Below, piece by piece: positions 20,586-31,739 of a stretch of 64,000 nt of DNA. The stretch lies in assembly GCA_033442325.1 (NCBI GenBank), contig JAWQFM010000001.1, forward strand, positions 101,225 to 165,224. Direction: 5' to 3'. Both the position numbers and the translations under genes were made by a program. This DNA comes from Salpingoeca rosetta. Its lineage: Eukaryota > Protista > Choanoflagellata. The notes beneath the pieces were generated by a model. That model did no database searches. It saw only the letters and a program-made list of their open reading frames with translations, and had not been told where the DNA came from. Numbering within the stretch: the stretch's first letter is position 1; the number at the start of each line of letters is the position of its first letter.

Positions 20586-20885
20586 TCAAATGGTGATGAA
20601 GATTCGTTTCAAGAAGAGGTAACGGGCCAGCAGCATCCACACGCCAATGTACGCCAGCGTCCACAGCATGACCTGGTAGTTGTATGTCGGCTTGAATGGC
20701 CGCTCATCACCGTCGCCCCAGAACACACCCGTCGGCCACAGAATATTCGCCAGGTTGTTCTCCTACAGGTTTTCAGGGGAATGGAGGGGGAAGAGAGGTG
20801 TGTTGGATGAGGCGAGTTGCGATAAGAGCAGACACCACGCAAGAGTCACGCAAGAGTATGCGCGTGCCAGTATGGACATGCAGAC

Positions 20886-20929
<44 letters not shown>

Positions 20930-21254
20930 TGAGAGGCAGACAGACAGACAGACACACACAGACACACACACACACAGAGACACACACACACACCGGCTTG
21001 TTCCAGTAGAATGCGGCCAGGACGTAGGGGATGATGTCGCCCTCAGCGCAAAGGTACATCACAATGGCGTTCATGCCCATGTATCTGCACCCGCTCCACG
21101 CCCACTCGCCCACGTGCAGGCGATCAACGATGACATAAAACAACGCAAGCAGCACCCCGCCTGTGCCAGCTGTCACGAGCGTGTACGAGATGGAGTACAG
21201 GTCTGACAACGAAAGGCATCGCATGCGTTCGCGTGTGCAAAGAGGAGATACATC

Positions 21255-21322
<68 letters not shown>

Positions 21323-22418
21323 TGAGTGTGTGTGTGTGTGTGTGTGAGTGCGTTGCCATGCAGCGCCCGACATTTTTTTTTTGAAGCACAAGCACGCAGC
21401 AATCACATTCCTCTTCCCAAGCAAACACACACACGCACACGCACGAACACGCGCGCGCACCTGTGTTCATGACGAATGCGCCAGAAAAGTGGAGGGCAAA
21501 GCCGATGACCAACTGCACAACACCAAACGCCGTCCAGTGCACAATTCGCGCCTTTGGTGACTGCACTCGGCGCAGAACCTGGCATGTGTGTATGTGTGTT
21601 GGGTGTGTGGGGGGGGGGAGGCGGGGGCACGTAAGTGTCATGGAAGATTGGGTCCGATGAAGCAAGACTGCTGCTGAGCAAGCTTGAAAAGCGAGATACC
21701 ATTGTTCAAACACACACACACACACATATGTGAACTCACGTGACCGTAGTGAATGCCGATGACGGTTGCGATGATGGCGTTGAGGGAGGAAACGAGGCCC
21801 TCCGGGTCAAAGGGGCCGTGCAGACACCACGCCGGAGCATCCTCGGGCGGTACGCACTTGCCGGGCGAGCACGTGCTACACTCGGGAAGACGCTGGAAGG
21901 TCACGTCGTTGCCGCTCTTGTCGCCTGCACCGAGCGCAAATGGATTGAGGAGGAGGGAATGGGGGGGGGGATGTTGGGTGACGGAGAGTCACGGAGGGAT
22001 GAGCAACAACGGGGGGGGGGGGTGTTGGCGGTTGAATTATCGCACGGACAGGAATCGACGCAAACCTATACGAACACAATGAAAGCTCAGGTATGCCCAC
22101 CTGAAGACACACAGACACAGACACACAGACACAGACACACAGACACACACGCACGCACACAGAGACACGCACACACAGACACGCGCACACGCACCTCCGT
22201 TGGCGGGAAAGTACATGTGCTCAACAGTGAGCACGTTGCGATCAATGTAGGTGGCGGCGTTGCAGGCGGGGGTGAGCACGCCACGCCCACACTCTTCTCC
22301 AAACGCATCAGGGACATTCACGCCATACATGATGCCCGTGTGCGTCGCAAACAAGCACGCAGCCGTGAACCAGTGCCACTTGTACCGCCACAGCATGTGT
22401 AGCACATCCACGGCCCAC

Positions 22419-22483
<65 letters not shown>

Positions 22484-22937
22484 AAGGGAACAAGAGGTTA
22501 TTCTTGGACATTGGGAGTAGACAGACTTGATTCTGCTCACACATTACCATAAACAATCACAGACACAGACGCACACACACACACACACACACACAGACAT
22601 GTACACATACACACACATACACACACACACAGACACAGACACACAGACACACACAGACATGTACACATACACACACACAGCACGACCTACCTGTGACGGT
22701 GTCAGTCTCGTTGTAATTGCGGTATTTCTTGTTCCTTGGCAGGAAAATCTCCATGAGGGCCACAGCGTAGTAGCAGACAGCAACACGCTGCAAGATGCCC
22801 ATGATGCGAATGTGCGCCAGGTCGTAGTTCATAATGTCAATACCGCCTTGTGTCAGCATGCCGAGGATAAACAGCTTCAGGAAGCGGATTGTCGCTTTGC
22901 GCAGCGCAGGCCATACGCGCGGCGTCGTCGTCGCGTC

Positions 22938-23019
<82 letters not shown>

Positions 23020-23609
23020 GATAGTGGGGTGAATGCGGGTTTGTGATGGTGATGTGTTCTCGTGCACGAATGTGTGACAGAAAAACACACGCACACGCAC
23101 GCACGCACACGCACACAAATACACACACGCACACACACAAGCCTTCAAACAAACAAACAAAAAAAAAACAAAAAAACAACACCACACACACACAGGCATC
23201 CACGACGCACAATTACGCTGCACCATCACCTTCGAGGTCAAACTTCTTAAAGGAGAGGGCGAGGGAGACGCCGACAATAAAGTCGAAGAACGGCATGACG
23301 AAATCCGCCAGACGAACGCCATTCCACGGCGAGTGGTCGATTGGAGGGAACGCGGCACCCGTCTCATCCACTGCACGCGTGTGTATGTGTGTTCATCGGT
23401 GAAGGAGGCAGCAGCTGAGCACGACAAACACACGCACACGCACACGCACACGCACACACACACACATATGAAAGAGCGGTGGCCACATCGTGCAATGCAA
23501 CATCGAGGACAATGACAATGGCAGTTGTGGCTGTACCAAAGACCATGAGGGCAACAGTGAATCCGCGAAAGACATCCAGACTCGACAACCGCTCCTTTGG
23601 CAGCGACCG
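20586..23609 (-). other. HGSNAT: HGSNAT (heparan-alpha-glucosaminide N-acetyltransferase)-type transmembrane catalytic portion
   Basis: Exons 23609-23537, 23370-23230, 22936-22691, 22419-22195, 21924-21740, 21578-21461, 21202-20994, 20762-20586. Motifs: [20 protein letters not shown], catalytic-His motif [65 protein letters not shown]-terminus [11 protein letters not shown]. Confidence 0.95.
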
Positions 23610-23715
23610 CTGATCGATTTGTTGGGGGAGGGATGGATTGATAAGGTGGGGCAACGTCGAACGTCGAACACACCCGTTGTGCAAAGACACACACACACAC
23701 GCGCGCGCGCGCACG

Positions 23716-23807
<92 letters not shown>

Positions 23808-26480
23808 CACACACACACACACACGCACGCACGCACACACACACGCACGCACGCACGCACGCACGCACACACACGCACGCACGCACACACACACACGCAC
23901 ACACACACACACAGACACACACACGCACGCACGCAGACACACGCACAGACACACACACACACAGACACGCAGCAGACCTGTGCTGGTTGGGCGTCAAGGG
24001 TTCCCCGGGCTGAGGCCGATGCTGCCGTGTTTGACCGAGAGCGGGCAGCCGCCACTGCCGCTGATGATGACGATGTTGGTGGCGGTGGCGGTGTTGCTGC
24101 CATGCGACTGGCGCGCGAGAACGACGATGAAGCAGGACGCGTGTCTCCAACAGCAAGAAGTGGCACCTCGTCCTCATTTGTCTTCGCGTGCTGCACTGAA
24201 CCTGCAGCACACGTGTGTGTTCGCGATGACAGGAAACAAACACATGACAGAGAGAGGTAGTATATGTGTGTAGGTGTGTGTGTGTGTGTGTAAGTGTGTG
24301 TGTGTGTGTAAGTGTGTCGTGGAGAAGTTGGGTGAGGTGCACTGTGATCACGTGTGTGTTGCGTGGCAGTGAGATCAAAACAGACACTCGCATGCAATTC
24401 ACCTGCGGTGCCTGCAGCCACTGATTGCGCATTGAGTGTGTCGTCGCGTCCGCTGAAAAACACAGTGTGATTGCGCCACGTTGGTATGTATGAACGATGA
24501 GCCAAGGTCGTGCATGGTACACATCACACTTCAAACGCACGTGTCAAGCCACGTCTGCCCAGGAATGACGTGATGCAATGCGACTCACCGCACGCGAAAG
24601 CCAACGCCGAAGCAGGCGGCAAAAACCCATACAACCGCGACGCCCAGCAGGAATATGAACACCAGCAACGCTGCAATGCGCGGTGGAAGAGATGGGAACA
24701 GTCAATGCACTTGAGCTGTCAGTTTCACACTGTTGCGTGCACACACACATATGAATGCATAGACGAACGAACACACAAACACAAATGCACAAACACGCAG
24801 GGGCAAAAGGTGCGTGTACACAGTGCACAGCAATTTGCACATGATACAGTCAACTCACCTGACATTTCGCCAACGGTCATGTTGACACTGTGATGATGAG
24901 ACGAGGAAAGCTGGTGGATGTTCACATCCTGCGTGCGTGGTGTGGCGGTGAGAGCAAACGGGGGAAGCAGAGTGGTCAAACATGCGCGGTGGGTGTTTGG
25001 TCGAAGGCTCACGAGACGTACATGTGTGTGTGCGTGTGTGTATGTGTGTGTATGTGTGTGTATGTGTGTATGTGTGTGTGTGTGTATGTGTGTGTGTATG
25101 TGTGTATCTGTGTGTATGTGTGTGTGCGTGCATGCGTGCGCGCGTGCACAGGCGCGGAGTTTTGCGGTGACACACGAGTTGCCGCACACCTGCGCGTCGT
25201 GGCTGCAGTAGTCTGCCCAGATGGGACCGACAGGGATGCCGCGTGCAGCCATGCGACACCGATGCACGCCTGAAAGGGGAAGTGGGGAATGAACGGTGGA
25301 TGGGGTGATCGGTAACCTGAGAGAATATGTTCATACACACACACTAGCATACACGAGAACGCATCGACACACACACACACACACACTCATACACACATAT
25401 GCACGCACACACACACATCGACACACACGCGCGCGCGCATACACACACACACATGTGCACGCGCGCGCATGCGCACACATACACACGCGCACATGCATGT
25501 GAGCATGCCCACGTGCCCACGGACCGATGCGCTGTGCCGCGTCGAAATGATCTGTTGCGTTTTGATTCCATAGTCGTTCGGCTGCGGCGAGAGCACGCGG
25601 CCACACCCGCGCATCAATGCTGAGATCAGACACCTACAGACGATGAGCAGTGCACGGGCAACCATGGTTGAGTTCTGTAGGCTCACTCAACGTGCTGAAA
25701 CAGTAAATACATGTACAAACGCAGCTACACGCGCGCATTCATCCATCAACAGCAACATCATCACCATCATGACGATGCCATGGCACACCTGCTCGCTCCA
25801 CATTGGCGCTTCGCCCCCGAGAATACGGCCGCCGCCCGCTGGTGCCCGTGGAAATGCAACCGCGTACATGTCTGCCCACGTGTCCAGCCAGAACCAGTGC
25901 GTCATGTTGCCGTATGGCACCTTGTGTTGGTTTTGTGTTGTGTTGTGTTGTGTTGTGTTGTATTGATTTTGTGTGTGCACGCGTAGGAGAATGTGGTGGC
26001 AATCAGCACGGTGAAATGGAGAGGTCAACAGGAATGATGTGTGAGAACACTTCAGAAGCACATACACACAAGCTTGCAACGTGTGCGTACGCACGCACAC
26101 ACGCACACACACACACACACACGCACGCACGCACACAAATACAGACACACGCAACAGCACACCTGCCGGTCGAGGTACCATCCGCTGGCGAAGAGGACGT
26201 CGTGTCCGGCGCGGAGTGCGCGCTCCAGCAAAGTCGGGTCGTCCCACACCTCCACGACGACAGATGTGTCGAGGTGGTCGTGCATGTCGGTGAAGGCCTC
26301 ATCCCACACAACAGCGCGGCGATTGTGTGTGCGCAGCATCGCAAACAGGCGTTGCTCAAAGTACACCTGGGTGGATAATGTATGATCATGGGTGAGGTGG
26401 GTGCTGTTGCATGGGCGGTGGAAAGCGCTCGTATTGAACCACCCAAAGCAAAACAGCAGCACGTGGGAAAGGAAAACAGC

Positions 26481-26526
<46 letters not shown>

Positions 26527-26715
26527 CGCGAGCGTGTGTGTGTATATGTGTATGTGTGTGTGCCTCATTGTTAAAGGCAGCATTGACATGACTATCATTA
26601 GCGCGTTTACCTCGAGCTGCTGCTCCGAAGAAATGTTGTTCTTCTTCATCCAATCTTGAATATCCTGTTGCCACGTCACAAACAACAACCAAAAACATGG
26701 ACTCATGTGAGTTCG

Positions 26716-26760
<45 letters not shown>

Positions 26761-27243
26761 ATACATGCATGTGTGTGTGTGTGCATGCCTTCATATGTGT
26801 ACCTGGTTGGCGCGCCAGCATTCGTACTGGACTTCATCGCCACCAACGTGCAGCATTGCGTCAGGAAACAGGGACGTCGTCTCTGCCAAGACATCCTCCA
26901 GCACCTGAGAACATCACGGTGGTTAGGAATGCGTGATTGCATGGCAACGAGTGACAGCACATGTGTGTATGTGTGTACGTCTGCGTCTGCGTCTGCGTCT
27001 GCATGTGAACACAATTGCGTCCATGCGCATATCTAGCCCTTTGTGCCTGCACACGAGCACGAACCTGGTACGTCAACTCCTTCGTCGGATCCAGAGGAAC
27101 GACGTTGATGGGCCCAATGTCCGTTGTGTGAATCTTCGGACACTCAACCGTGATGTCAGGATAGGCCAGGCCCCAGCTGCAGCCCATGCAAGGCCGATGC
27201 ACAGGCAAGTGTGTGTGTGTGTGCGTGTGTGTGGGCGTGTGTG

Positions 27244-27320
<77 letters not shown>

Positions 27321-28234
27321 GTGTGTGTGTGAAGGTGGTGCATGCTGCAATGTCACAAGTGATGGGTGCATCATACGGTCATAGGAACAGACAAAGGAAC
27401 AGCAATGCGTTTTTACTTCATCGAATTTGCGTGACTACATGACAGCGTCGCACCTGTACGCGTGTCCGGGGACGTCAATCTCTGGAATGACGCGAATGCC
27501 GCGCTGTTGCGCGTATTCCTGCACCGCTCGCATGTCTGCGCGCGTGTACACCGTGGTGTTGCTCCACGCACCGCGGCGGCTGAGCATGGGGCGGCTCGGC
27601 ACCTGGGAAGAGCAGGGGACACGTGGAGGATGACGGTGGTCGTGGGTGGGGTGTGCATGCTGGTCAGGAGCAAAGTGCAAAGATATATGCAAGGATGCAA
27701 GGGTGGGCACACTCGTGTATACACGGCACATTCGCACCTACAGCACAAGCTTACACACAGACACACAGACACACAGACACACACAGACACACAGACACAC
27801 ACACAAAAAAACACAAACGCAGGCACACACAGACACACACACACACCCGCCTCTCAGCAGACCTGCATGGGGAATGAGTACGAGTCGACGAGGTGCCAGT
27901 GGAGCGTGTTCATCTTGACAGCAACCATGCCATCCAACAGCCGTTTGATCGCCGGCACCCCGATAAAGTGGTTGGCCGAGTCCACCATGATGCCTGTGAT
28001 ACATGTTCATGGCGGCATCCAGGCAGGGGTTGGCGTTGGGCGGGTGCACACGGGCAACGTGTTCACGTGTCACACGCCATATCCTCCCGTTGCCCAAAGA
28101 GCCAAACCACCCACCCACCCACCCACCACCACCACCACATACAACACGCACACACACGCACACACAACACACACACACACAACACACAACACACGCGCAC
28201 GCACACAACACACGCACACAACACGCACGCACAC

Positions 28235-28266
<32 letters not shown>

Positions 28267-30339
28267 GCACACAACACTAGTTTCTCTCCCCCATCCTTCA
28301 CTTCACCTCGCATCGGGTAGCTTGGCTCGTCCCAAATCTCCAGCGGGGCGTCTGTTCATTGGTAACACGGGTCGGAGCACGTGCACGCACTGTGAGGGCA
28401 GCATGCTCATGAACGTGTGGCCAGTCGCGATCGCTTTGCGGCAGATACGTGGTGCGCATGTATGCACGTGCACACACGGCGAGAAAGCAGCGTGACCGCC
28501 TTGGAATCGACGACAGGATACACAACAGTACTCACGCGAGATGGTGTGGGCACTCGTCACGTCGTTGAACATGATGACCTGGGATAGAGTTTCTAGCGCA
28601 TACATTGCGCCCCAGCTGGCAGAATCGATGATAGCACACCAAGGCATGCGCAAACCTCAAAGATGAGCTTGTGAGGAGCATTGCTTGGCAGGCACAGGCC
28701 GTGCCAGCGTGCAAATTTGTGTGGGCGTGCGTGTGTGTATATGGGTGTGTGTGTGTGTGTGTGCATGCGAGTGTGTGTGTATGGGTGTGTGTGTGCATGC
28801 GAGTGTGTGTGTATGGGTGTGTGTATGTGTGTGTGTGTGTAGTGGTGGGGGGTATGTCGTAGTGTCGGTGTGTGTGTATCCAGAGGCGTTTATGTAGAAA
28901 TGTGGTACGGGAGTGTGGGTTAAGTGTGCCAAATGAACGCTGGGATATGCGAACGCCCCACACTGACGCATACGGCAGAGACCTTATAACGCCCCTGCTA
29001 GAGTCTAGCGACCATTACCGTCACGTACGGGGTATATGTGGGGGGGGGGTGTGCATGCGGGTGTGTGTGTGTGGGTGTGTGTATGTGTGTGTGTATGTGG
29101 GGGGGGGGGTGTGCATGCGGGTGTGTGTGTGTGTGTGATGATATGCCATGTGCTAGTGGTTGCATTCCGCTTACATGGTTTGGGCTGTGATGTGGGTGGT
29201 GGGGCTCGTGACGTTGAGGAAATACGATTCGTTGGACGCAACATGCTTCAGCGTCTCCGTGTCGTCGAGGACTGAGATGGACACCGTTGTCAGGTAAGGA
29301 ACTGCGCGCGAGCCTGCACGCATGCGCGTGATTGAAGTGATCATGTACACGCAATGGGAACAGACAAGTAAGGGTGCGAAATATTGATCGTGTCCGTGGT
29401 CGGCAGCAGCACCAAACAGCAGCTTGTACGTGTTTTAACGGACAACTTGCATGGCACTTGCTTTCTGCGGAGACACTGACCATTCTTGCTGGGGCTAGCT
29501 GCGCTCGCATCAAGCGTGTCTGGCCAGCCGGCCTTCATGTGAGGTTCCAGGTCCCCTCGATGCCTGTGCACAAACTGTGATGTGTTGGACGTGAGAGTGT
29601 TTTGAATACAATGCCCGAGTGCCGGTCAGTGCAAATAGTGTGAGCAGTTGGACATCGCATGCAGCGACCTTGCCAGCCAGCATGTGCCCCTTCTTCTTCT
29701 TCGTCTTTTTCTCGTGTTCCCACAAACGGTACAGCAGCAACGGCCGTTGCGCTCTTCGTGTGCATCTTCACTGACCTTTGTGAGAAGTAGATCTGAATAA
29801 CGGTCGATGGCTTGCTGTAGCACAGTATTGGATGAGTTGCTATTGATTTGCAGCGCTGGGTGCACCGACTGCGTGTGTGTTTATGTGTGTGTGTGTGTGT
29901 GTGTTGGGGTGAGTGAGCAAGTGTGCGCAAGTGAGATATGTGTGTGTGTGTGTGTGTGTGCGTGAGTGAGCGAACGCGTGTGAGTGTACGCAAACATCCA
30001 TGTACACAAACATCTTTGTACACAAACATCTATGTACAAACATCTATGTACACAAACATCTGTGTACGCAAACATGTGTGAACTCTTCCAACACAATCCA
30101 ATACGCAGCAGCACACCAGATTCCACAGTCACTCGGCACAAACTCACGATGGTTGTGCTGTGTGTCCTGCAACGCGTGGGCTTTGGCCACACTGTAGCAA
30201 TCCCATCGCACCCGCCCGTGCTCACAACAGCTCCTGCTGAGCATAATGGCACCACTGTTGTGGCCAGCGCCACCAGCGCCACAACCGCCAGCAGGACCGC
30301 TCGCACACAACACACTTCTCCACAACACCGCAGCAGCAT
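20586..30339 (-). CDS. Putative fusion protein: signal peptide + GH20 beta-N-acetylhexosaminidase + TM helix + linker + HGSNAT-type transmembrane N-acetyltransferase
   Basis: One continuous phase-consistent splice path runs from ATG 30339 to TGA 20586. Bridging exons are 25269-25190, 24928-24859, 24670-24589, 24452-24403, 24201-23978 and 23609-23537, all GT..AG. There is no stop after the GH20 C-terminal motif. Confidence 0.75.
25190..30339 (-). other. GH20 beta-hexosaminidase portion (HEXA/HEXB-like)
   Basis: Signal peptide [13 protein letters not shown]. Motifs: [79 protein letters not shown], catalytic HVGGDEV (about 26830-26850), [48 protein letters not shown]. Confidence 0.96.
29985..30075. 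repeat. About 16-bp minisatellite (TGTACACAAACATCTN) x5-6 in intron 1 of the hexosaminidase gene
   Basis: Tandem imperfect copies visible directly in the sequence. Confidence 0.85.
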
Positions 30340-30476
30340 CGTCAACCAAAACAACGGTTTGCGACAACACAAAATAAAAGCGACTGCCTGCACGCACTCG
30401 TCGCATGCGCTCCTTCTTCCACTCCTTCCTTGCCTCTTCACACGCGAAGGCTCCACCCACGAACGATCATAGGATC

Positions 30477-31739
30477 ATGCTTCTTCCCCACGCCCAGCAC
30501 GCCCGCATCCCGTGCTTCGCTGCGCTTGCCGCTGTTGCCCTTCTCACGCTTGCGGTGGGGAGTCTTGCTGGGTCTGGGCGCGCGTCGCTGACGCAGGACG
30601 CGAATGGAACCGTGCATTTGCGCACCAGCGACCCGTCCCAGCGCGTGCTGGTGAACGATGTAGATGTGCTCGGTGTCTTGCGTGAGCTCCAGAGCCAACA
30701 AGGCGTGCTCGACACACTGAAGGTTCGCATGTGTGCGGGCGTGGATGCACTCGCCACCATTGGTGGTCCCTTCACTGCTCCGTACTCCGACGTCGTTGCA
30801 GCGCCAAACGGCATTCTTTATGGCATTCCAAGCGTTGGCGATGAGGTGGCCTGGATCAACCCTCGCACCGGACAGGTCGGAACCGTCCTCATTCGGAACA
30901 TCAATTGGGCTTCAAGTTTATACTGGGCCAGTGGGGTACTGGCAAGCAATGGCAAAATCTACGGTACGCCTGCCAAAGCGCAGTTTGTCCTTATCATCGA
31001 TCCGGCCACCAACACCGTGGATGTGTCCACAATCGAGGTGCCTGTGCCGCCAGTCGACCCTCAGAATGCGCAGTGGGCGGGCGCCGTCCTTGCACCCAAC
31101 GACAAGATCTACGCCGTTCCCCGCCACGGCACAAGCGTCCTCATCATCAACACGAAAACGAACCTGGCGGATGTCACGACCATCGCCAGTGTCAGCACAC
31201 CACTGCAGACCGACCAGTGGCACGCTGCAGTGCTGGCGCACAACGGCCTCATCTACGGTATCCCCTTGTCTGCCAGCTCCGTCCTCATCATCAACCCTGC
31301 CACAGACACAGCGGACACAACCACACTCGCAAATGTTGGCAGTGGCATGAAGAAGTGGCTTGGCGCAGTGACGGGTCAAGATGGCCGCATCTACGGTATT
31401 CCCTACGACAGCCCGCACGTGCTCGTGATCGACCCAAGCACGAACACCTTCGACACCACCAGCGTCGCCACAAACTTTATGGCCGGTGGTGACAAGTGGG
31501 CCGGGGGCGTGCTGCTCGACGACGGCCACATCCTCGGCATGCCAAGAGCAGCCCAGAGCGTGCTCTTGATTGACCCGAGCACGAACACCACGGATGCCGC
31601 CTCTCTGGCCCTGGGCATGCTCGGTAGCGAAACTGAGCTGCAGTGGAGCGCCGCGGCCCTCGCTGTCGACGGAAAAGTGTACGCCGTTCCTCTTCAGATC
31701 GACGACGTTCTTGTCATTGACACCTTCTGCATGCTGTGA
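30477..31739 (+). CDS. Intronless secreted 7-repeat beta-propeller protein (paralog B)
   Basis: Single exon (an in-frame upstream ATG also exists at 30405). Signal peptide FAALAAVALLTLAVGSLA, motif DANGTVHLRT..RVLVNDVDVLGVL, and 7 repeats of the type WxGxVLAxNGxIYGIPxxAxxVLIIDPxTNTxDxTT. Same architecture as 13526-14842. Confidence 0.87.
   Translation: MLLPHAQHARIPCFAALAAVALLTLAVGSLAGSGRASLTQDANGTVHLRTSDPSQRVLVNDVDVLGVLRELQSQQGVLDTLKVRMCAGVDALATIGGPFTAPYSDVVAAPNGILYGIPSVGDEVAWINPRTGQVGTVLIRNINWASSLYWASGVLASNGKIYGTPAKAQFVLIIDPATNTVDVSTIEVPVPPVDPQNAQWAGAVLAPNDKIYAVPRHGTSVLIINTKTNLADVTTIASVSTPLQTDQWHAAVLAHNGLIYGIPLSASSVLIINPATDTADTTTLANVGSGMKKWLGAVTGQDGRIYGIPYDSPHVLVIDPSTNTFDTTSVATNFMAGGDKWAGGVLLDDGHILGMPRAAQSVLLIDPSTNTTDAASLALGMLGSETELQWSAAALAVDGKVYAVPLQIDDVLVIDTFCML

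What the first reader, a model, noticed from the sequence alone, without database searches (positions are those of the whole stretch)
20586..30339. GH20 beta-hexosaminidase fused to an HGSNAT-type acetyltransferase: candidate single-chain 'acetylate-then-cleave' lysosomal system
Seen: the GH20 domain reaches its usual end ([19 protein letters not shown]) without a stop codon. Five consecutive GT..AG introns with matching phases (0,1,2,1,0) join it via [14 protein letters not shown], a TM helix, and a linker to [16 protein letters not shown]. Both catalytic signatures are intact (HVGGDE; HSPWNG). Known: HGSNAT uses cytosolic acetyl-CoA to N-acetylate terminal glucosamine in the lysosomal lumen. 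In heparan sulfate turnover its product is removed by alpha-specific NAGLU (GH89). GH20 enzymes are beta-specific and need the N-acetyl group for substrate-assisted catalysis. Inference: coupling to GH20 points to a different substrate, beta-linked free GlcN/GalN ends. Candidates are chitosan/partly deacetylated chitin, lysozyme-resistant de-N-acetylated peptidoglycan, or deacetylated PNAG from ingested prey, re-acetylated and then clipped. I am not aware of this fusion being described.
Basis: partly seen in the sequence, partly recalled or inferred. Interest (0 to 1): 0.9.

Follow-up and report, generated by a model that had tools for sequence, protein, structure and literature searches.

The report
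Hexosaminidase fused to membrane acetyltransferase
In the choanoflagellate Salpingoeca rosetta, and in its relatives, one expressed gene joins a sugar-clipping enzyme (GH20 beta-hexosaminidase) to a membrane enzyme that acetylates amino sugars (HGSNAT family); the pairing sits unremarked in public gene models and suggests a two-step way to digest de-acetylated amino-sugar chains.

Summary
Transcript contigs of 3.5 kb from two further studies span both halves. The gene has 27 exons and encodes 1171 aa in this order: signal peptide, GH20b and GH20 domains, 23-aa linker, TM1, disordered cytosolic loop, 10-TM acetyltransferase domain. The organism is Salpingoeca rosetta and the gene is PTSG_09649. 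The public model already carries the fusion but has a wrong N-terminus. Complete fused ORFs exist in at least six other choanoflagellates of both orders. Catalytic residues of both halves are conserved.

- The acetyltransferase half is not the HGSNAT orthologue. An animal-type HGSNAT and two NAGLU genes lie elsewhere in the genome.
- The GH20 half belongs to a subfamily with Asn in place of the canonical substrate-binding Arg.
- No paper describes the fusion, but databases hold it.

"Acetylate, then cleave" beta-hexosamine ends is plausible. Human HGSNAT is routinely assayed this way with added hexosaminidase, and bacterial NagX homologues sit near GH20 genes. It remains unproven. Interest is moderate to high.

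The parts
20586..30339 (-). Whole coding region of the fused gene (S. rosetta PTSG_09649, corrected model): 27 exons, 3516 nt, 1171 aa
   Evidence: Exon threading with GT..AG at all 26 introns; RNA joints and spanning contigs; 100% match of an exon to P0001
30148..30339 (-). Exon 1: start codon, signal peptide (hydrophobic core aa 15-33) and the WPKP start of the GH20b domain
   Evidence: Hydropathy scan; aligns with N-termini of complete orthologue ORFs; absent from the NCBI model
28536..29868 (-). Exons 2-5 (29868-29776, 29574-29481, 29313-29175, 28615-28536): GH20b N-terminal domain, aa 65-200
   Evidence: Pfam Glycohydro_20b2; orthologue alignment fixes exon 2 donor at 29776 and the middle exon
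25190..28351 (-). Exons 6-15: GH20 catalytic domain, aa 200-572. N222 at 27973-27971, S252/Y253 at 27883-27878, H305, D368/E369 at 26838-26833, Y461/D463/R464 at 26177-26166, W506/E508 at 25800-25792
   Evidence: Pfam Glyco_hydro_20 1e-90; human HexB E 2e-93; residue table; splice joints in RNA
24859..24928 (-). Exon 16: luminal linker [23 protein letters not shown] joining GH20 to TM1
   Evidence: Joints 25190/24928 and 24859/24670 in raw reads; variable in length among orthologues; pLDDT <50 in the orthologue model
24589..24670 (-). Exon 17: TM1 (aa 595-620, [25 protein letters not shown])
   Evidence: Hydropathy 2.93; helix 581-605 in the AF2 model of the M. roanoka orthologue; conserved in orthologues
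23978..24452 (-). Exons 18-19: cytosolic loop CL1 (aa 623-714), low complexity, with acidic dileucine motif DEVPLL (aa 650-656, 24172-24152)
   Evidence: RNA joints; PLL conserved in orthologues; motif search; same position as human ETDRLI (PMC11357348)
20586..23609 (-). Exons 20-27: HGSNAT-family 10-TM acetyltransferase domain, aa 715-1171. D726, R729, M736, D740, H751 (23335-23333), D761, R803, R829, E984, Y1093
   Evidence: phmmer to human HGSNAT structures E 7.5e-26; Pfam HGSNAT_cat 23.6 bits; residue table; coordinates

Best explanation
Shown: one gene gives one about 3.5-kb mRNA and one 1171-aa membrane protein. A signal peptide puts a HexA/B-like GH20 beta-N-acetylhexosaminidase in the lumen. 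A short flexible linker and one membrane helix (TM1) follow, then a disordered cytosolic loop. The loop leads into a 10-helix HGSNAT-family domain. In the human enzyme this domain threads cytosolic acetyl-CoA through the membrane to a luminal His-Asp site that N-acetylates a terminal glucosamine. The arrangement is conserved across choanoflagellates.

Inferred: the protein lives in endolysosomes or food vacuoles, both halves are active, and they act in sequence on the same chain end. The acetyltransferase would N-acetylate a non-reducing beta-linked GlcN or GalN. GH20 cannot cut such a residue, because its mechanism needs the 2-acetamido group. The tethered GH20 would then remove the new GlcNAc or GalNAc. 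Likely substrates are partly de-N-acetylated amino-sugar polymers from bacterial prey (peptidoglycan, PNAG, chitosan-like material).

My odds:
- Single fused gene: about 0.97.
- Both halves active: about 0.75.
- Sequential coupling on beta-hexosamine ends: about 0.4-0.45.
For: - Fusion: junction reads and spanning contigs from three studies, with even depth over both halves and no intron retention. The frame stays open through 27 exons.
- Conservation: complete fused ORFs occur in Microstomoeca roanoka, Barroeca monosierra, Monosiga brevicollis, Salpingoeca infusionum, Didymoeca costata and Stephanoeca diplocostata, with TM1 and a PLL motif conserved.
- GH20 active site: the Asp-Glu pair, His, Trp/Tyr cage, Asp and Glu are kept in all catalytically intact fusions.
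- HGSNAT site: D272, R275, M282, H297, D307, R345, R372 and E499 equivalents are kept, Y611 in all but M. brevicollis (Phe). Their roles are given in PMC11199644.
- Topology: 9 of 10 N-glycosylation sequons lie before TM1, and DEVPLL lies after TM1, where human HGSNAT has ETDRLI (PMC11357348).
- Chemistry: human HGSNAT acetylates beta-glucosaminides, and its usual assay is coupled to beta-hexosaminidase (PMC3177862; MU-beta-GlcN bound in the active site, PMC11199644).
- Independent link: bacterial NagX (HGSNAT family) lies in chitin/GlcNAc regulons and is needed for glucosamine use (PMC9007349, PMC2996990, PMC7014002).
- My own bacterial test: 11 of 80 bacterial GH20 loci carry a Pfam HGSNAT_cat gene within 10 kb (8 checked with Pfam, 3 by my own profile), against about 1% expected.
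- Division of labour: S. rosetta has a separate animal-type HGSNAT and two NAGLU genes and makes no detectable heparan sulfate (bioRxiv 10.1101/139022). The fused paralogue is therefore free for another substrate.
- One divergent fusion (P0045) has lost catalytic residues in both halves together.
Against: - There is no biochemical or localisation evidence, and the substrate is unknown.
- The GH20 half has Asn222 where nearly all GH20 enzymes have the sugar-binding Arg (HexA R178, HexB R211), so its specificity or activity may differ. The same signature occurs in 21 stand-alone eukaryotic GH20 proteins, so it is not tied to the fusion.
- N286 of human HGSNAT is Asp here.
- The linker is variable and disordered, and AF2 gives pTM 0.58 with no confident domain packing. 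The complex test gave no verdict. Nothing therefore shows that the two active sites face each other.
- Three environmental fusions have Gly at the HexB D240 position.
- The bacterial neighbourhood sample is mostly Acidobacteriota and is not phylogenetically independent.
- The double-dead paralogue is a single case.
Confidence: 0.45

Rival explanations
1. Tethering or co-delivery only. The fusion anchors a HexA/B-like hydrolase to the endolysosomal membrane and borrows the sorting signals of the membrane partner. The hydrolase may be released later by cleavage in the linker. The two enzymes work on unrelated substrates, for example GH20 on chondroitin, N-glycans or glycolipids, and the acetyltransferase on something else.
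For: The linker is flexible, variable and low-confidence, and no domain docking is predicted. A sorting-type motif, DEVPLL, lies next to TM1. Human HGSNAT is itself cleaved into two chains (PMC11357348). S. rosetta makes chondroitin, which needs a beta-hexosaminidase for breakdown (bioRxiv 10.1101/139022).
Against: At least five other GH20 loci in the same genome have no HGSNAT-like match beside them, so fusion is not needed for delivery. The partnership of the two families recurs in bacterial gene neighbourhoods (PMC9007349). Other TmAT-family fusions (OatA, OafB, CASD1) pair the membrane domain with a soluble domain that acts on the same glycan (PMC12423673).
Confidence: 0.3
2. The GH20 domain serves mainly as the luminal sugar-recognition module of the acetyltransferase. 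It takes the place of the metazoan luminal domain, whose proposed role is substrate recognition and positioning. Hydrolysis is weak or secondary.
For: GH20 occupies exactly the position of the human luminal domain, before TM1 (PMC11357348). The canonical sugar-binding Arg is replaced by Asn. A paralogue keeps the architecture with a dead GH20 site.
Against: All other catalytic residues are conserved across choanoflagellate orders, and the same Asn/Ser-Tyr signature occurs in stand-alone enzymes. The dead paralogue has also lost the acetyltransferase His, so it does not show an active transferase with a lectin-like GH20.
Confidence: 0.1
3. Free-sugar salvage, as proposed for bacterial NagX. The membrane domain acetylates free glucosamine in the lumen to GlcNAc for export. 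GH20 simply feeds the same GlcNAc pool, and there is no ordered action on one chain end.
For: NagX is proposed to act on free periplasmic glucosamine (PMC9007349). Glucosamine is a competitive inhibitor of human HGSNAT, so the free sugar binds it (abstract of bioRxiv 10.1101/2021.08.26.457793, listed). The GlcN-contacting R372 and E499 are conserved.
Against: This does not explain why the two enzymes should be one polypeptide for hundreds of millions of years. It has no direct evidence either.
Confidence: 0.1
4. Artefact: two neighbouring genes joined by read-through transcription or mis-assembly, with HGSNAT translated from Met at 24880.
For: An in-frame ATG exists at 24880, just before TM1. 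Contigs alone cannot prove a single transcript.
Against: Raw junction reads cross 25190/24928 in two runs. Depth is even, there is no cluster of read ends near 24900 and no intron retention. There is no stop codon after GH20. Complete fused ORFs appear in independent transcriptomes of at least six other species.
Confidence: 0.02

Closest known systems
[quoted passage not shown]
   Same: Same order of parts: luminal N-terminal domain, TM1, disordered cytosolic loop with an acidic dileucine motif, then a 10-TM domain. The His-Asp dyad, CoA-binding Arg residues and GlcN-binding Arg and Glu are conserved.
   Different: The luminal beta-sandwich is replaced by a 530-aa GH20 enzyme. N286 is Asp and F310 is Met, as in plant homologues. 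The domain falls outside the animal-type clade, which holds a second S. rosetta gene on contig 14. The organism makes no detectable heparan sulfate (bioRxiv 10.1101/139022).
Human beta-hexosaminidase B/A (GH20; PDB 1NOU, 2GJX)
   Same: Best solved match (E 2e-93), aligned from the GH20b domain to the last residues. It shares the Asp-Glu pair, His, Trp cage, Tyr450, Asp452 and Glu491. It also has an Arg at the position of HexA Arg424.
   Different: Asn222 stands in place of Arg211 (HexB) / Arg178 (HexA), with Ser-Tyr after Asp240. The protein is membrane-tethered and continues into an acetyltransferase instead of ending.
Bacterial NagX (HGSNAT_cat family) with GH20 Hex in chitin/GlcNAc utilisation regulons
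   Same: The same two families work in one pathway for beta-linked amino sugars. NagX is proposed to use cytoplasmic acetyl-CoA to N-acetylate glucosamine outside the cytoplasm (PMC9007349). 11 of 80 bacterial GH20 loci have an HGSNAT_cat neighbour.
   Different: The bacterial genes are separate, not fused. The proteins are periplasmic rather than endolysosomal. NagX lacks TM1. The bacterial GH20 enzymes keep the canonical Arg.
Other TmAT-superfamily fusions: OatA and OafB (AT3-SGNH), CASD1
   Same: A transmembrane acyl-CoA-conducting domain is fused to a soluble extracytoplasmic carbohydrate-active domain that works on the same glycan (PMC12423673).
   Different: There the soluble partner is an SGNH transferase that completes the acyl transfer. 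Here it is a glycoside hydrolase that would destroy the acetylated product.

Membership tests
GH20 beta-N-acetylhexosaminidase (HexA/B-like) | Catalytic (beta/alpha)8 domain matching Pfam PF00728 above its cut-off | tested here: met
   305 bits against a cut-off of 22.3, covering profile positions 1-347 of 348; human HexB E 2e-93
GH20 beta-N-acetylhexosaminidase (HexA/B-like) | N-terminal GH20b domain | tested here: met
   PF14845 41.6 bits on the truncated public model. The missing first half (WPKP...) is encoded by exons 1-2 and aligns with orthologues.
GH20 beta-N-acetylhexosaminidase (HexA/B-like) | Catalytic Asp-Glu pair in H-x-G-G-D-E, with the His, Trp cage, Tyr, Asp and Glu of the -1 subsite | tested here: met
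   D368, E369, H305, W418, W438, Y461, D463, W506 and E508 are conserved in 13-14 of 15 fused sequences
GH20 beta-N-acetylhexosaminidase (HexA/B-like) | Substrate-binding Arg of the D-x-x-R-H motif (HexB R211, HexA R178) | tested here: not met
   Asn222 in every catalytically intact fused sequence that covers the site, and in 21 of 119 stand-alone eukaryotic GH20 proteins. Arg in 94 of 119 stand-alone proteins and in all 80 bacterial loci.
GH20 beta-N-acetylhexosaminidase (HexA/B-like) | Hydrolysis of terminal beta-GlcNAc or beta-GalNAc | not testable with these tools
   Needs an enzyme assay
HGSNAT / TmAT family (Pfam PF07786, TCDB 9.B.169) | Sequence match to the catalytic TM2-TM11 domain | tested here: met
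   phmmer to human HGSNAT chains, E 7.5e-26, over residues 253-615. Pfam HGSNAT_cat is only marginal at 23.6 bits against 22, and the precomputed annotation omits it.
HGSNAT / TmAT family (Pfam PF07786, TCDB 9.B.169) | Catalytic His297-Asp307 dyad, DxxR motif, Arg345, and GlcN-binding Arg372 and Glu499 | tested here: met
   H751, D761, D726, R729, R803, R829 and E984 are kept in all intact fusions, Y1093 in all but M. brevicollis (Phe). Roles are given in PMC11199644.
HGSNAT / TmAT family (Pfam PF07786, TCDB 9.B.169) | Asn286, which stabilises the acetyl carbonyl | tested here: not met
   Asp740, as in plant homologues. The human N286D mutant keeps more activity than N286Q or N286A (PMC11199644).
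Orthologue of metazoan HGSNAT (heparan sulfate pathway) | Groups with animal HGSNAT in a tree of the TM domain | tested here: not met
   The fused clade is separate. The S. rosetta gene on contig 14 groups with Saccoglossus HGSNAT (SH-aLRT 96-99) and keeps Asn286. This is a quick tree without bootstrap.
Orthologue of metazoan HGSNAT (heparan sulfate pathway) | Luminal beta-sandwich domain before TM1 | tested here: not met
   The region before TM1 is GH20b plus GH20
Lysosomal membrane protein | Location in lysosomes or food vacuoles | not testable with these tools
   Only indirect evidence: a DEVPLL motif after TM1 and YLFL near the C-terminus, by analogy with human ETDRLI and YXXO (PMC11357348)

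The most novel reading that the evidence does not exclude
Choanoflagellates carry a dedicated one-protein route that re-acetylates and then clips de-N-acetylated beta-hexosamine glycans in the food vacuole. This would counter the de-N-acetylation that bacteria use to protect peptidoglycan and PNAG from host glycosidases. The same chemistry would explain the unknown role of non-metazoan HGSNAT homologues (plants, protists) and of bacterial NagX.
Probability: 0.25. Interest if true: 0.8.

Novelty: new variant of a known kind. Interest (0 to 1): 0.6.

Why it matters
- HGSNAT carries out the only known synthetic reaction in the lysosome. Outside animals its family has no assigned substrate.
- A fusion to a beta-specific hexosaminidase, conserved throughout choanoflagellates, is a natural "Rosetta stone". 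It argues that the ancestral job of this family is in turnover of beta-linked amino sugars (chitin, peptidoglycan and similar), with heparan sulfate as a later metazoan specialisation.
- This agrees with genetic data on bacterial NagX.
- It gives a directly testable prediction in S. rosetta, a genetically tractable model: acetyl-CoA-dependent release from 4MU-beta-GlcN by a single protein.
- The public annotation names the protein only as a hexosaminidase and truncates its N-terminus. The architecture is therefore easy to miss.

Tried and rejected
- Complex prediction on the GH20 and acetyltransferase halves of the M. roanoka orthologue gave no verdict (score 0.00, alignments not used). It counts neither for nor against docking.
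- AF2 of the full orthologue folds both domains with high confidence (mean pLDDT 85), but pTM is 0.58 and the linker and loop are disordered. It gives no information on domain packing.
- Searching the genome for Pfam HGSNAT_cat exon by exon found nothing, not even this gene. Protein queries were needed.
- The search for related loci with the acetyltransferase alignment found no bacterial relative.
- The Atlas search was blank.
- The contig around P0038 was uninformative.
- ORFs upstream of the contig-14 HGSNAT gene gave no phmmer match to the human luminal domain. Homology of that region is therefore not shown.
- Literature searches for the locus tags and for the domain pair found nothing.
- Alternative exon-2 donors (29772, 29742, 29733, 29724) and the NCBI start ([11 protein letters not shown]) were rejected on the orthologue alignment.
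- A link between the Asn-type GH20 and bacterial HGSNAT neighbours was rejected. All 80 bacterial enzymes have Arg.
- Endogenous chitosan as a substrate gained no support. There is one chitin-synthase-like locus, but no CE4 deacetylase was found exon by exon. Absence is not proven.

Full report
**1. What is in the sequence**

The region is an intron-rich eukaryotic gene on the minus strand, and its introns are largely (CA/TG)n microsatellite. I threaded the protein through the DNA with GT..AG introns only. This gives 27 exons, 3516 coding bases and 1171 residues, from the ATG at 30339 to the stop at 20586.

The last GH20 exon ends at 25190 with ...[13 protein letters not shown]. It aligns to human HexB up to residue 512 of the 514-residue chain 5bro_A, so the hydrolase has reached its normal end. 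No stop codon follows. They encode:
- a 23-residue linker;
- a strongly hydrophobic helix (aa 595-620, hydropathy 2.93);
- a low-complexity loop;
- [16 protein letters not shown], which begins the acetyltransferase domain.

**2. Is it transcribed as one unit?**

Yes. I laid two raw stranded RNA runs and two sets of transcript contigs, three studies in all, on window 22750-28700 (5951 letters).
- Every predicted joint is present with CT..AC ends on the + strand, which is GT..AG on the gene strand. The decisive joint 25190/24928 has 6 and 13 reads. The joints 24859/24670, 24589/24452, 24403/24201 and 23537/23370 are also seen.
- Intron 25189-24929 has depth 0 and 0.6, so it is spliced out.
- Depth is similar over both halves.
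- Nearly all first mates lie on the + strand, as expected for a minus-strand RNA in the usual stranded library.
- No cluster of read ends marks an internal start or an early poly(A) site.
- Single contigs of 3455 and 3577 nt cover exons of both halves and bridge the joint 23978/23609, where the GT-repeat intron was masked.

The longer contig fits the 3516-nt coding region plus very short untranslated ends.

**3. Identity and the public record**

A 78-residue acetyltransferase exon found a 1087-residue protein at 100% identity. It is Salpingoeca rosetta PTSG_09649 (XP_004990073.1, UniProt F2ULL2). NCBI calls it hypothetical and UniRef calls it beta-N-acetylhexosaminidase.

That model already contains the fusion. 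Its precomputed Pfam list shows only the GH20 domains, because the HGSNAT_cat match is marginal at 23.6 bits against a cut-off of 22.

Its N-terminus is wrong.

**4. Conservation**

Complete fused ORFs of 1047-1332 residues occur in six other species:
- Craspedida: Microstomoeca roanoka, Barroeca monosierra, Monosiga brevicollis, Salpingoeca infusionum;
- Acanthoecida: Didymoeca costata, Stephanoeca diplocostata.

Several environmental sequences also carry the fusion. I found no fusion outside choanoflagellates and unidentified environmental material. TM1 is conserved, while the linker and loop vary in length. The acetyltransferase half is the more conserved: 69% mean column identity against 53% for GH20. 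In quick trees the fused GH20 domains and the fused acetyltransferase domains each cluster together, so a single origin is not excluded.

**5. The GH20 half**

The catalytic Asp-Glu pair, His, Trp cage, Tyr, Asp and Glu are all present.

The Arg that binds O3 and O4 of the sugar in essentially all characterised GH20 enzymes (HexB R211, HexA R178; family knowledge) is Asn222. It comes with Ser252-Tyr253 and Arg464. This signature is found in every catalytically intact fusion that covers the site, and in 21 of 119 stand-alone eukaryotic GH20 proteins. It is a subfamily trait rather than a consequence of fusion.

By contrast, the two other S. rosetta GH20 loci I examined (on contigs 2 and 6), and 80 bacterial relatives, keep Arg. 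What the Asn type does to specificity is unknown.

**6. The acetyltransferase half**

It matches human HGSNAT structures at E 7.5e-26 over TM2-TM11. The following are conserved, numbered as in the human 663-residue form with roles from PMC11199644:
- the His297-Asp307 dyad;
- D272 and R275;
- M282;
- R345;
- the GlcN-contacting R372 and E499;
- Y611 (Phe in M. brevicollis).

N286 is Asp and F310 is Met, as in plant homologues.

The genome holds a second HGSNAT-family gene on contig 14. It keeps Asn286 and groups with an animal HGSNAT (Saccoglossus) with SH-aLRT 96-99. Two NAGLU (GH89) loci are also present. The fused gene is therefore a paralogue, not the heparan-sulfate orthologue. S. rosetta makes chondroitin but no detectable heparan sulfate (bioRxiv 10.1101/139022).

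**7. Topology and location**

The predicted layout puts GH20 in the lumen, in the place of the human luminal domain, whose function is still unclear (PMC11357348). Four things support this:
- the signal peptide;
- 9 of 10 N-glycosylation sequons lying before TM1;
- TM1 itself;
- the known topology of human HGSNAT.

DEVPLL lies in the loop after TM1, where human HGSNAT has its ETDRLI sorting motif. This is the only pointer to an endolysosomal location, and it is inference.

**8. How it may work**

GH20 enzymes use the substrate's own 2-acetamido group as nucleophile (family knowledge), so a terminal GlcN or GalN blocks them. An acetyltransferase tethered beside the hydrolase could remove that block. 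Three lines make this more than a guess:
- Human HGSNAT acetylates beta-glucosaminides. Its standard assay is 4MU-beta-GlcN plus acetyl-CoA, coupled to beta-hexosaminidase (PMC3177862; substrate analogue seen in the active site, PMC11199644).
- Bacterial NagX, of the same family, belongs to chitin/GlcNAc regulons, is needed for growth on glucosamine, and is proposed to N-acetylate it outside the cytoplasm (PMC9007349, PMC2996990). A GH20 gene lies close to a DUF1624 gene in Paraglaciecola (figure legend of PMC7014002).
- In my own sample, 11 of 80 bacterial GH20 loci have a Pfam HGSNAT_cat gene within 10 kb (8 checked with Pfam, 3 by my own profile). These genomes hold 2-4 such genes per 5 Mb, so about 1% is expected by chance. 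The sample is dominated by Acidobacteriota and is not independent.

One divergent fusion (P0045) has lost the key residues of both halves together. That fits coupling, but it is a single case.

**9. What remains open**

Nothing shows that the two sites face each other. The linker is disordered, AF2 gives pTM 0.58, and the complex test gave no verdict. Simple co-delivery, a lectin-like role for GH20, or salvage of free glucosamine all remain possible.

**10. Verdict**

The architecture is a new variant built from two known families. It is present in databases but, as far as my searches reach, undescribed in the literature.

Noticed in passing
window 29175 / 28615 (exon 4-5 joint): RNA reads and contigs from three studies read ...CAAACCAGCTGGGG (Thr-Ser-Trp). 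The genome with canonical GT..AG splicing gives ...CAAACCATCTGGGG (Thr-Ile-Trp, as in the NCBI protein). Either the last exon base differs (T in the assembly, G in RNA) or the joint is non-canonical. Position 29175 lay outside the stretch I could lay reads on.
   Followed up: partly
window 29481-30339: The public model PTSG_09649 (P0001) starts at an internal out-of-frame ATG ([11 protein letters not shown]). It lacks the true first 95 residues, which hold the signal peptide and the first half of the GH20b domain.
   Followed up: yes
G000:C14 about 578000-581600 (L024 about 5000-8600, minus strand): A second HGSNAT-family gene of animal type (FVNYGGG..., Asn286 kept, 46% identical to a Saccoglossus HGSNAT). 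Upstream it has a TM1-like helix and about 250 codons of open frame. PMC11357348 states that the luminal domain and TM1 are metazoan-only. This gene suggests at least TM1 is older, but I could not show homology of the upstream part.
   Followed up: partly
P0045 (Logan contig L026:27-2957): A divergent GH20-HGSNAT fusion from an unidentified organism. Both active sites are degenerate: GH20 Asp-Glu is Ala-Ser, HGSNAT His297 is Gly and Glu499 is Asn. It may be a pseudoenzyme.
   Followed up: partly
P0172-P0232 (21 proteins); window 27971-27973 and 27878-27883: A eukaryotic GH20 subfamily has Asn for the canonical substrate-binding Arg, with Ser-Tyr after the conserved Asp. It occurs as stand-alone enzymes (for example in Ectocarpus fasciculatus) and in all choanoflagellate fusions. 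I know of no characterised member.
   Followed up: partly
window 30405-31739 (+): An intronless 444-aa secreted repeat protein (Pfam DUF6923, beta-propeller-like) starts only 65 bases from the ATG of the fused gene, on the other strand. The two genes must share a very short divergent promoter.
   Followed up: no
window 22937-23030, 23690-23960, 25030-25140 and most other introns: The introns are dominated by long (CA/TG)n runs. Intron 21 ends in a (CAA)n run that reads as poly-Gln, poly-Thr or poly-Asn in the three frames. These repeats create many long spurious ORFs.
   Followed up: no
L065, L069, L078, L086, L099, L100 (Terriglobia MAGs), about 3.4-5.2 kb in each locus: A conserved arrangement: an HGSNAT_cat/Acyl_transf_3 membrane protein gene lies about 5 kb upstream of a HexB-like GH20 gene on the same strand. 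L080, L082 and L090 show a second arrangement, with a closer HGSNAT relative on the opposite strand.
   Followed up: partly
G000:C10:1696566-1698218 and G000:C7:242777-244364: There are two NAGLU (GH89) loci in a species reported to make no heparan sulfate. Their natural substrate is unclear.
   Followed up: no
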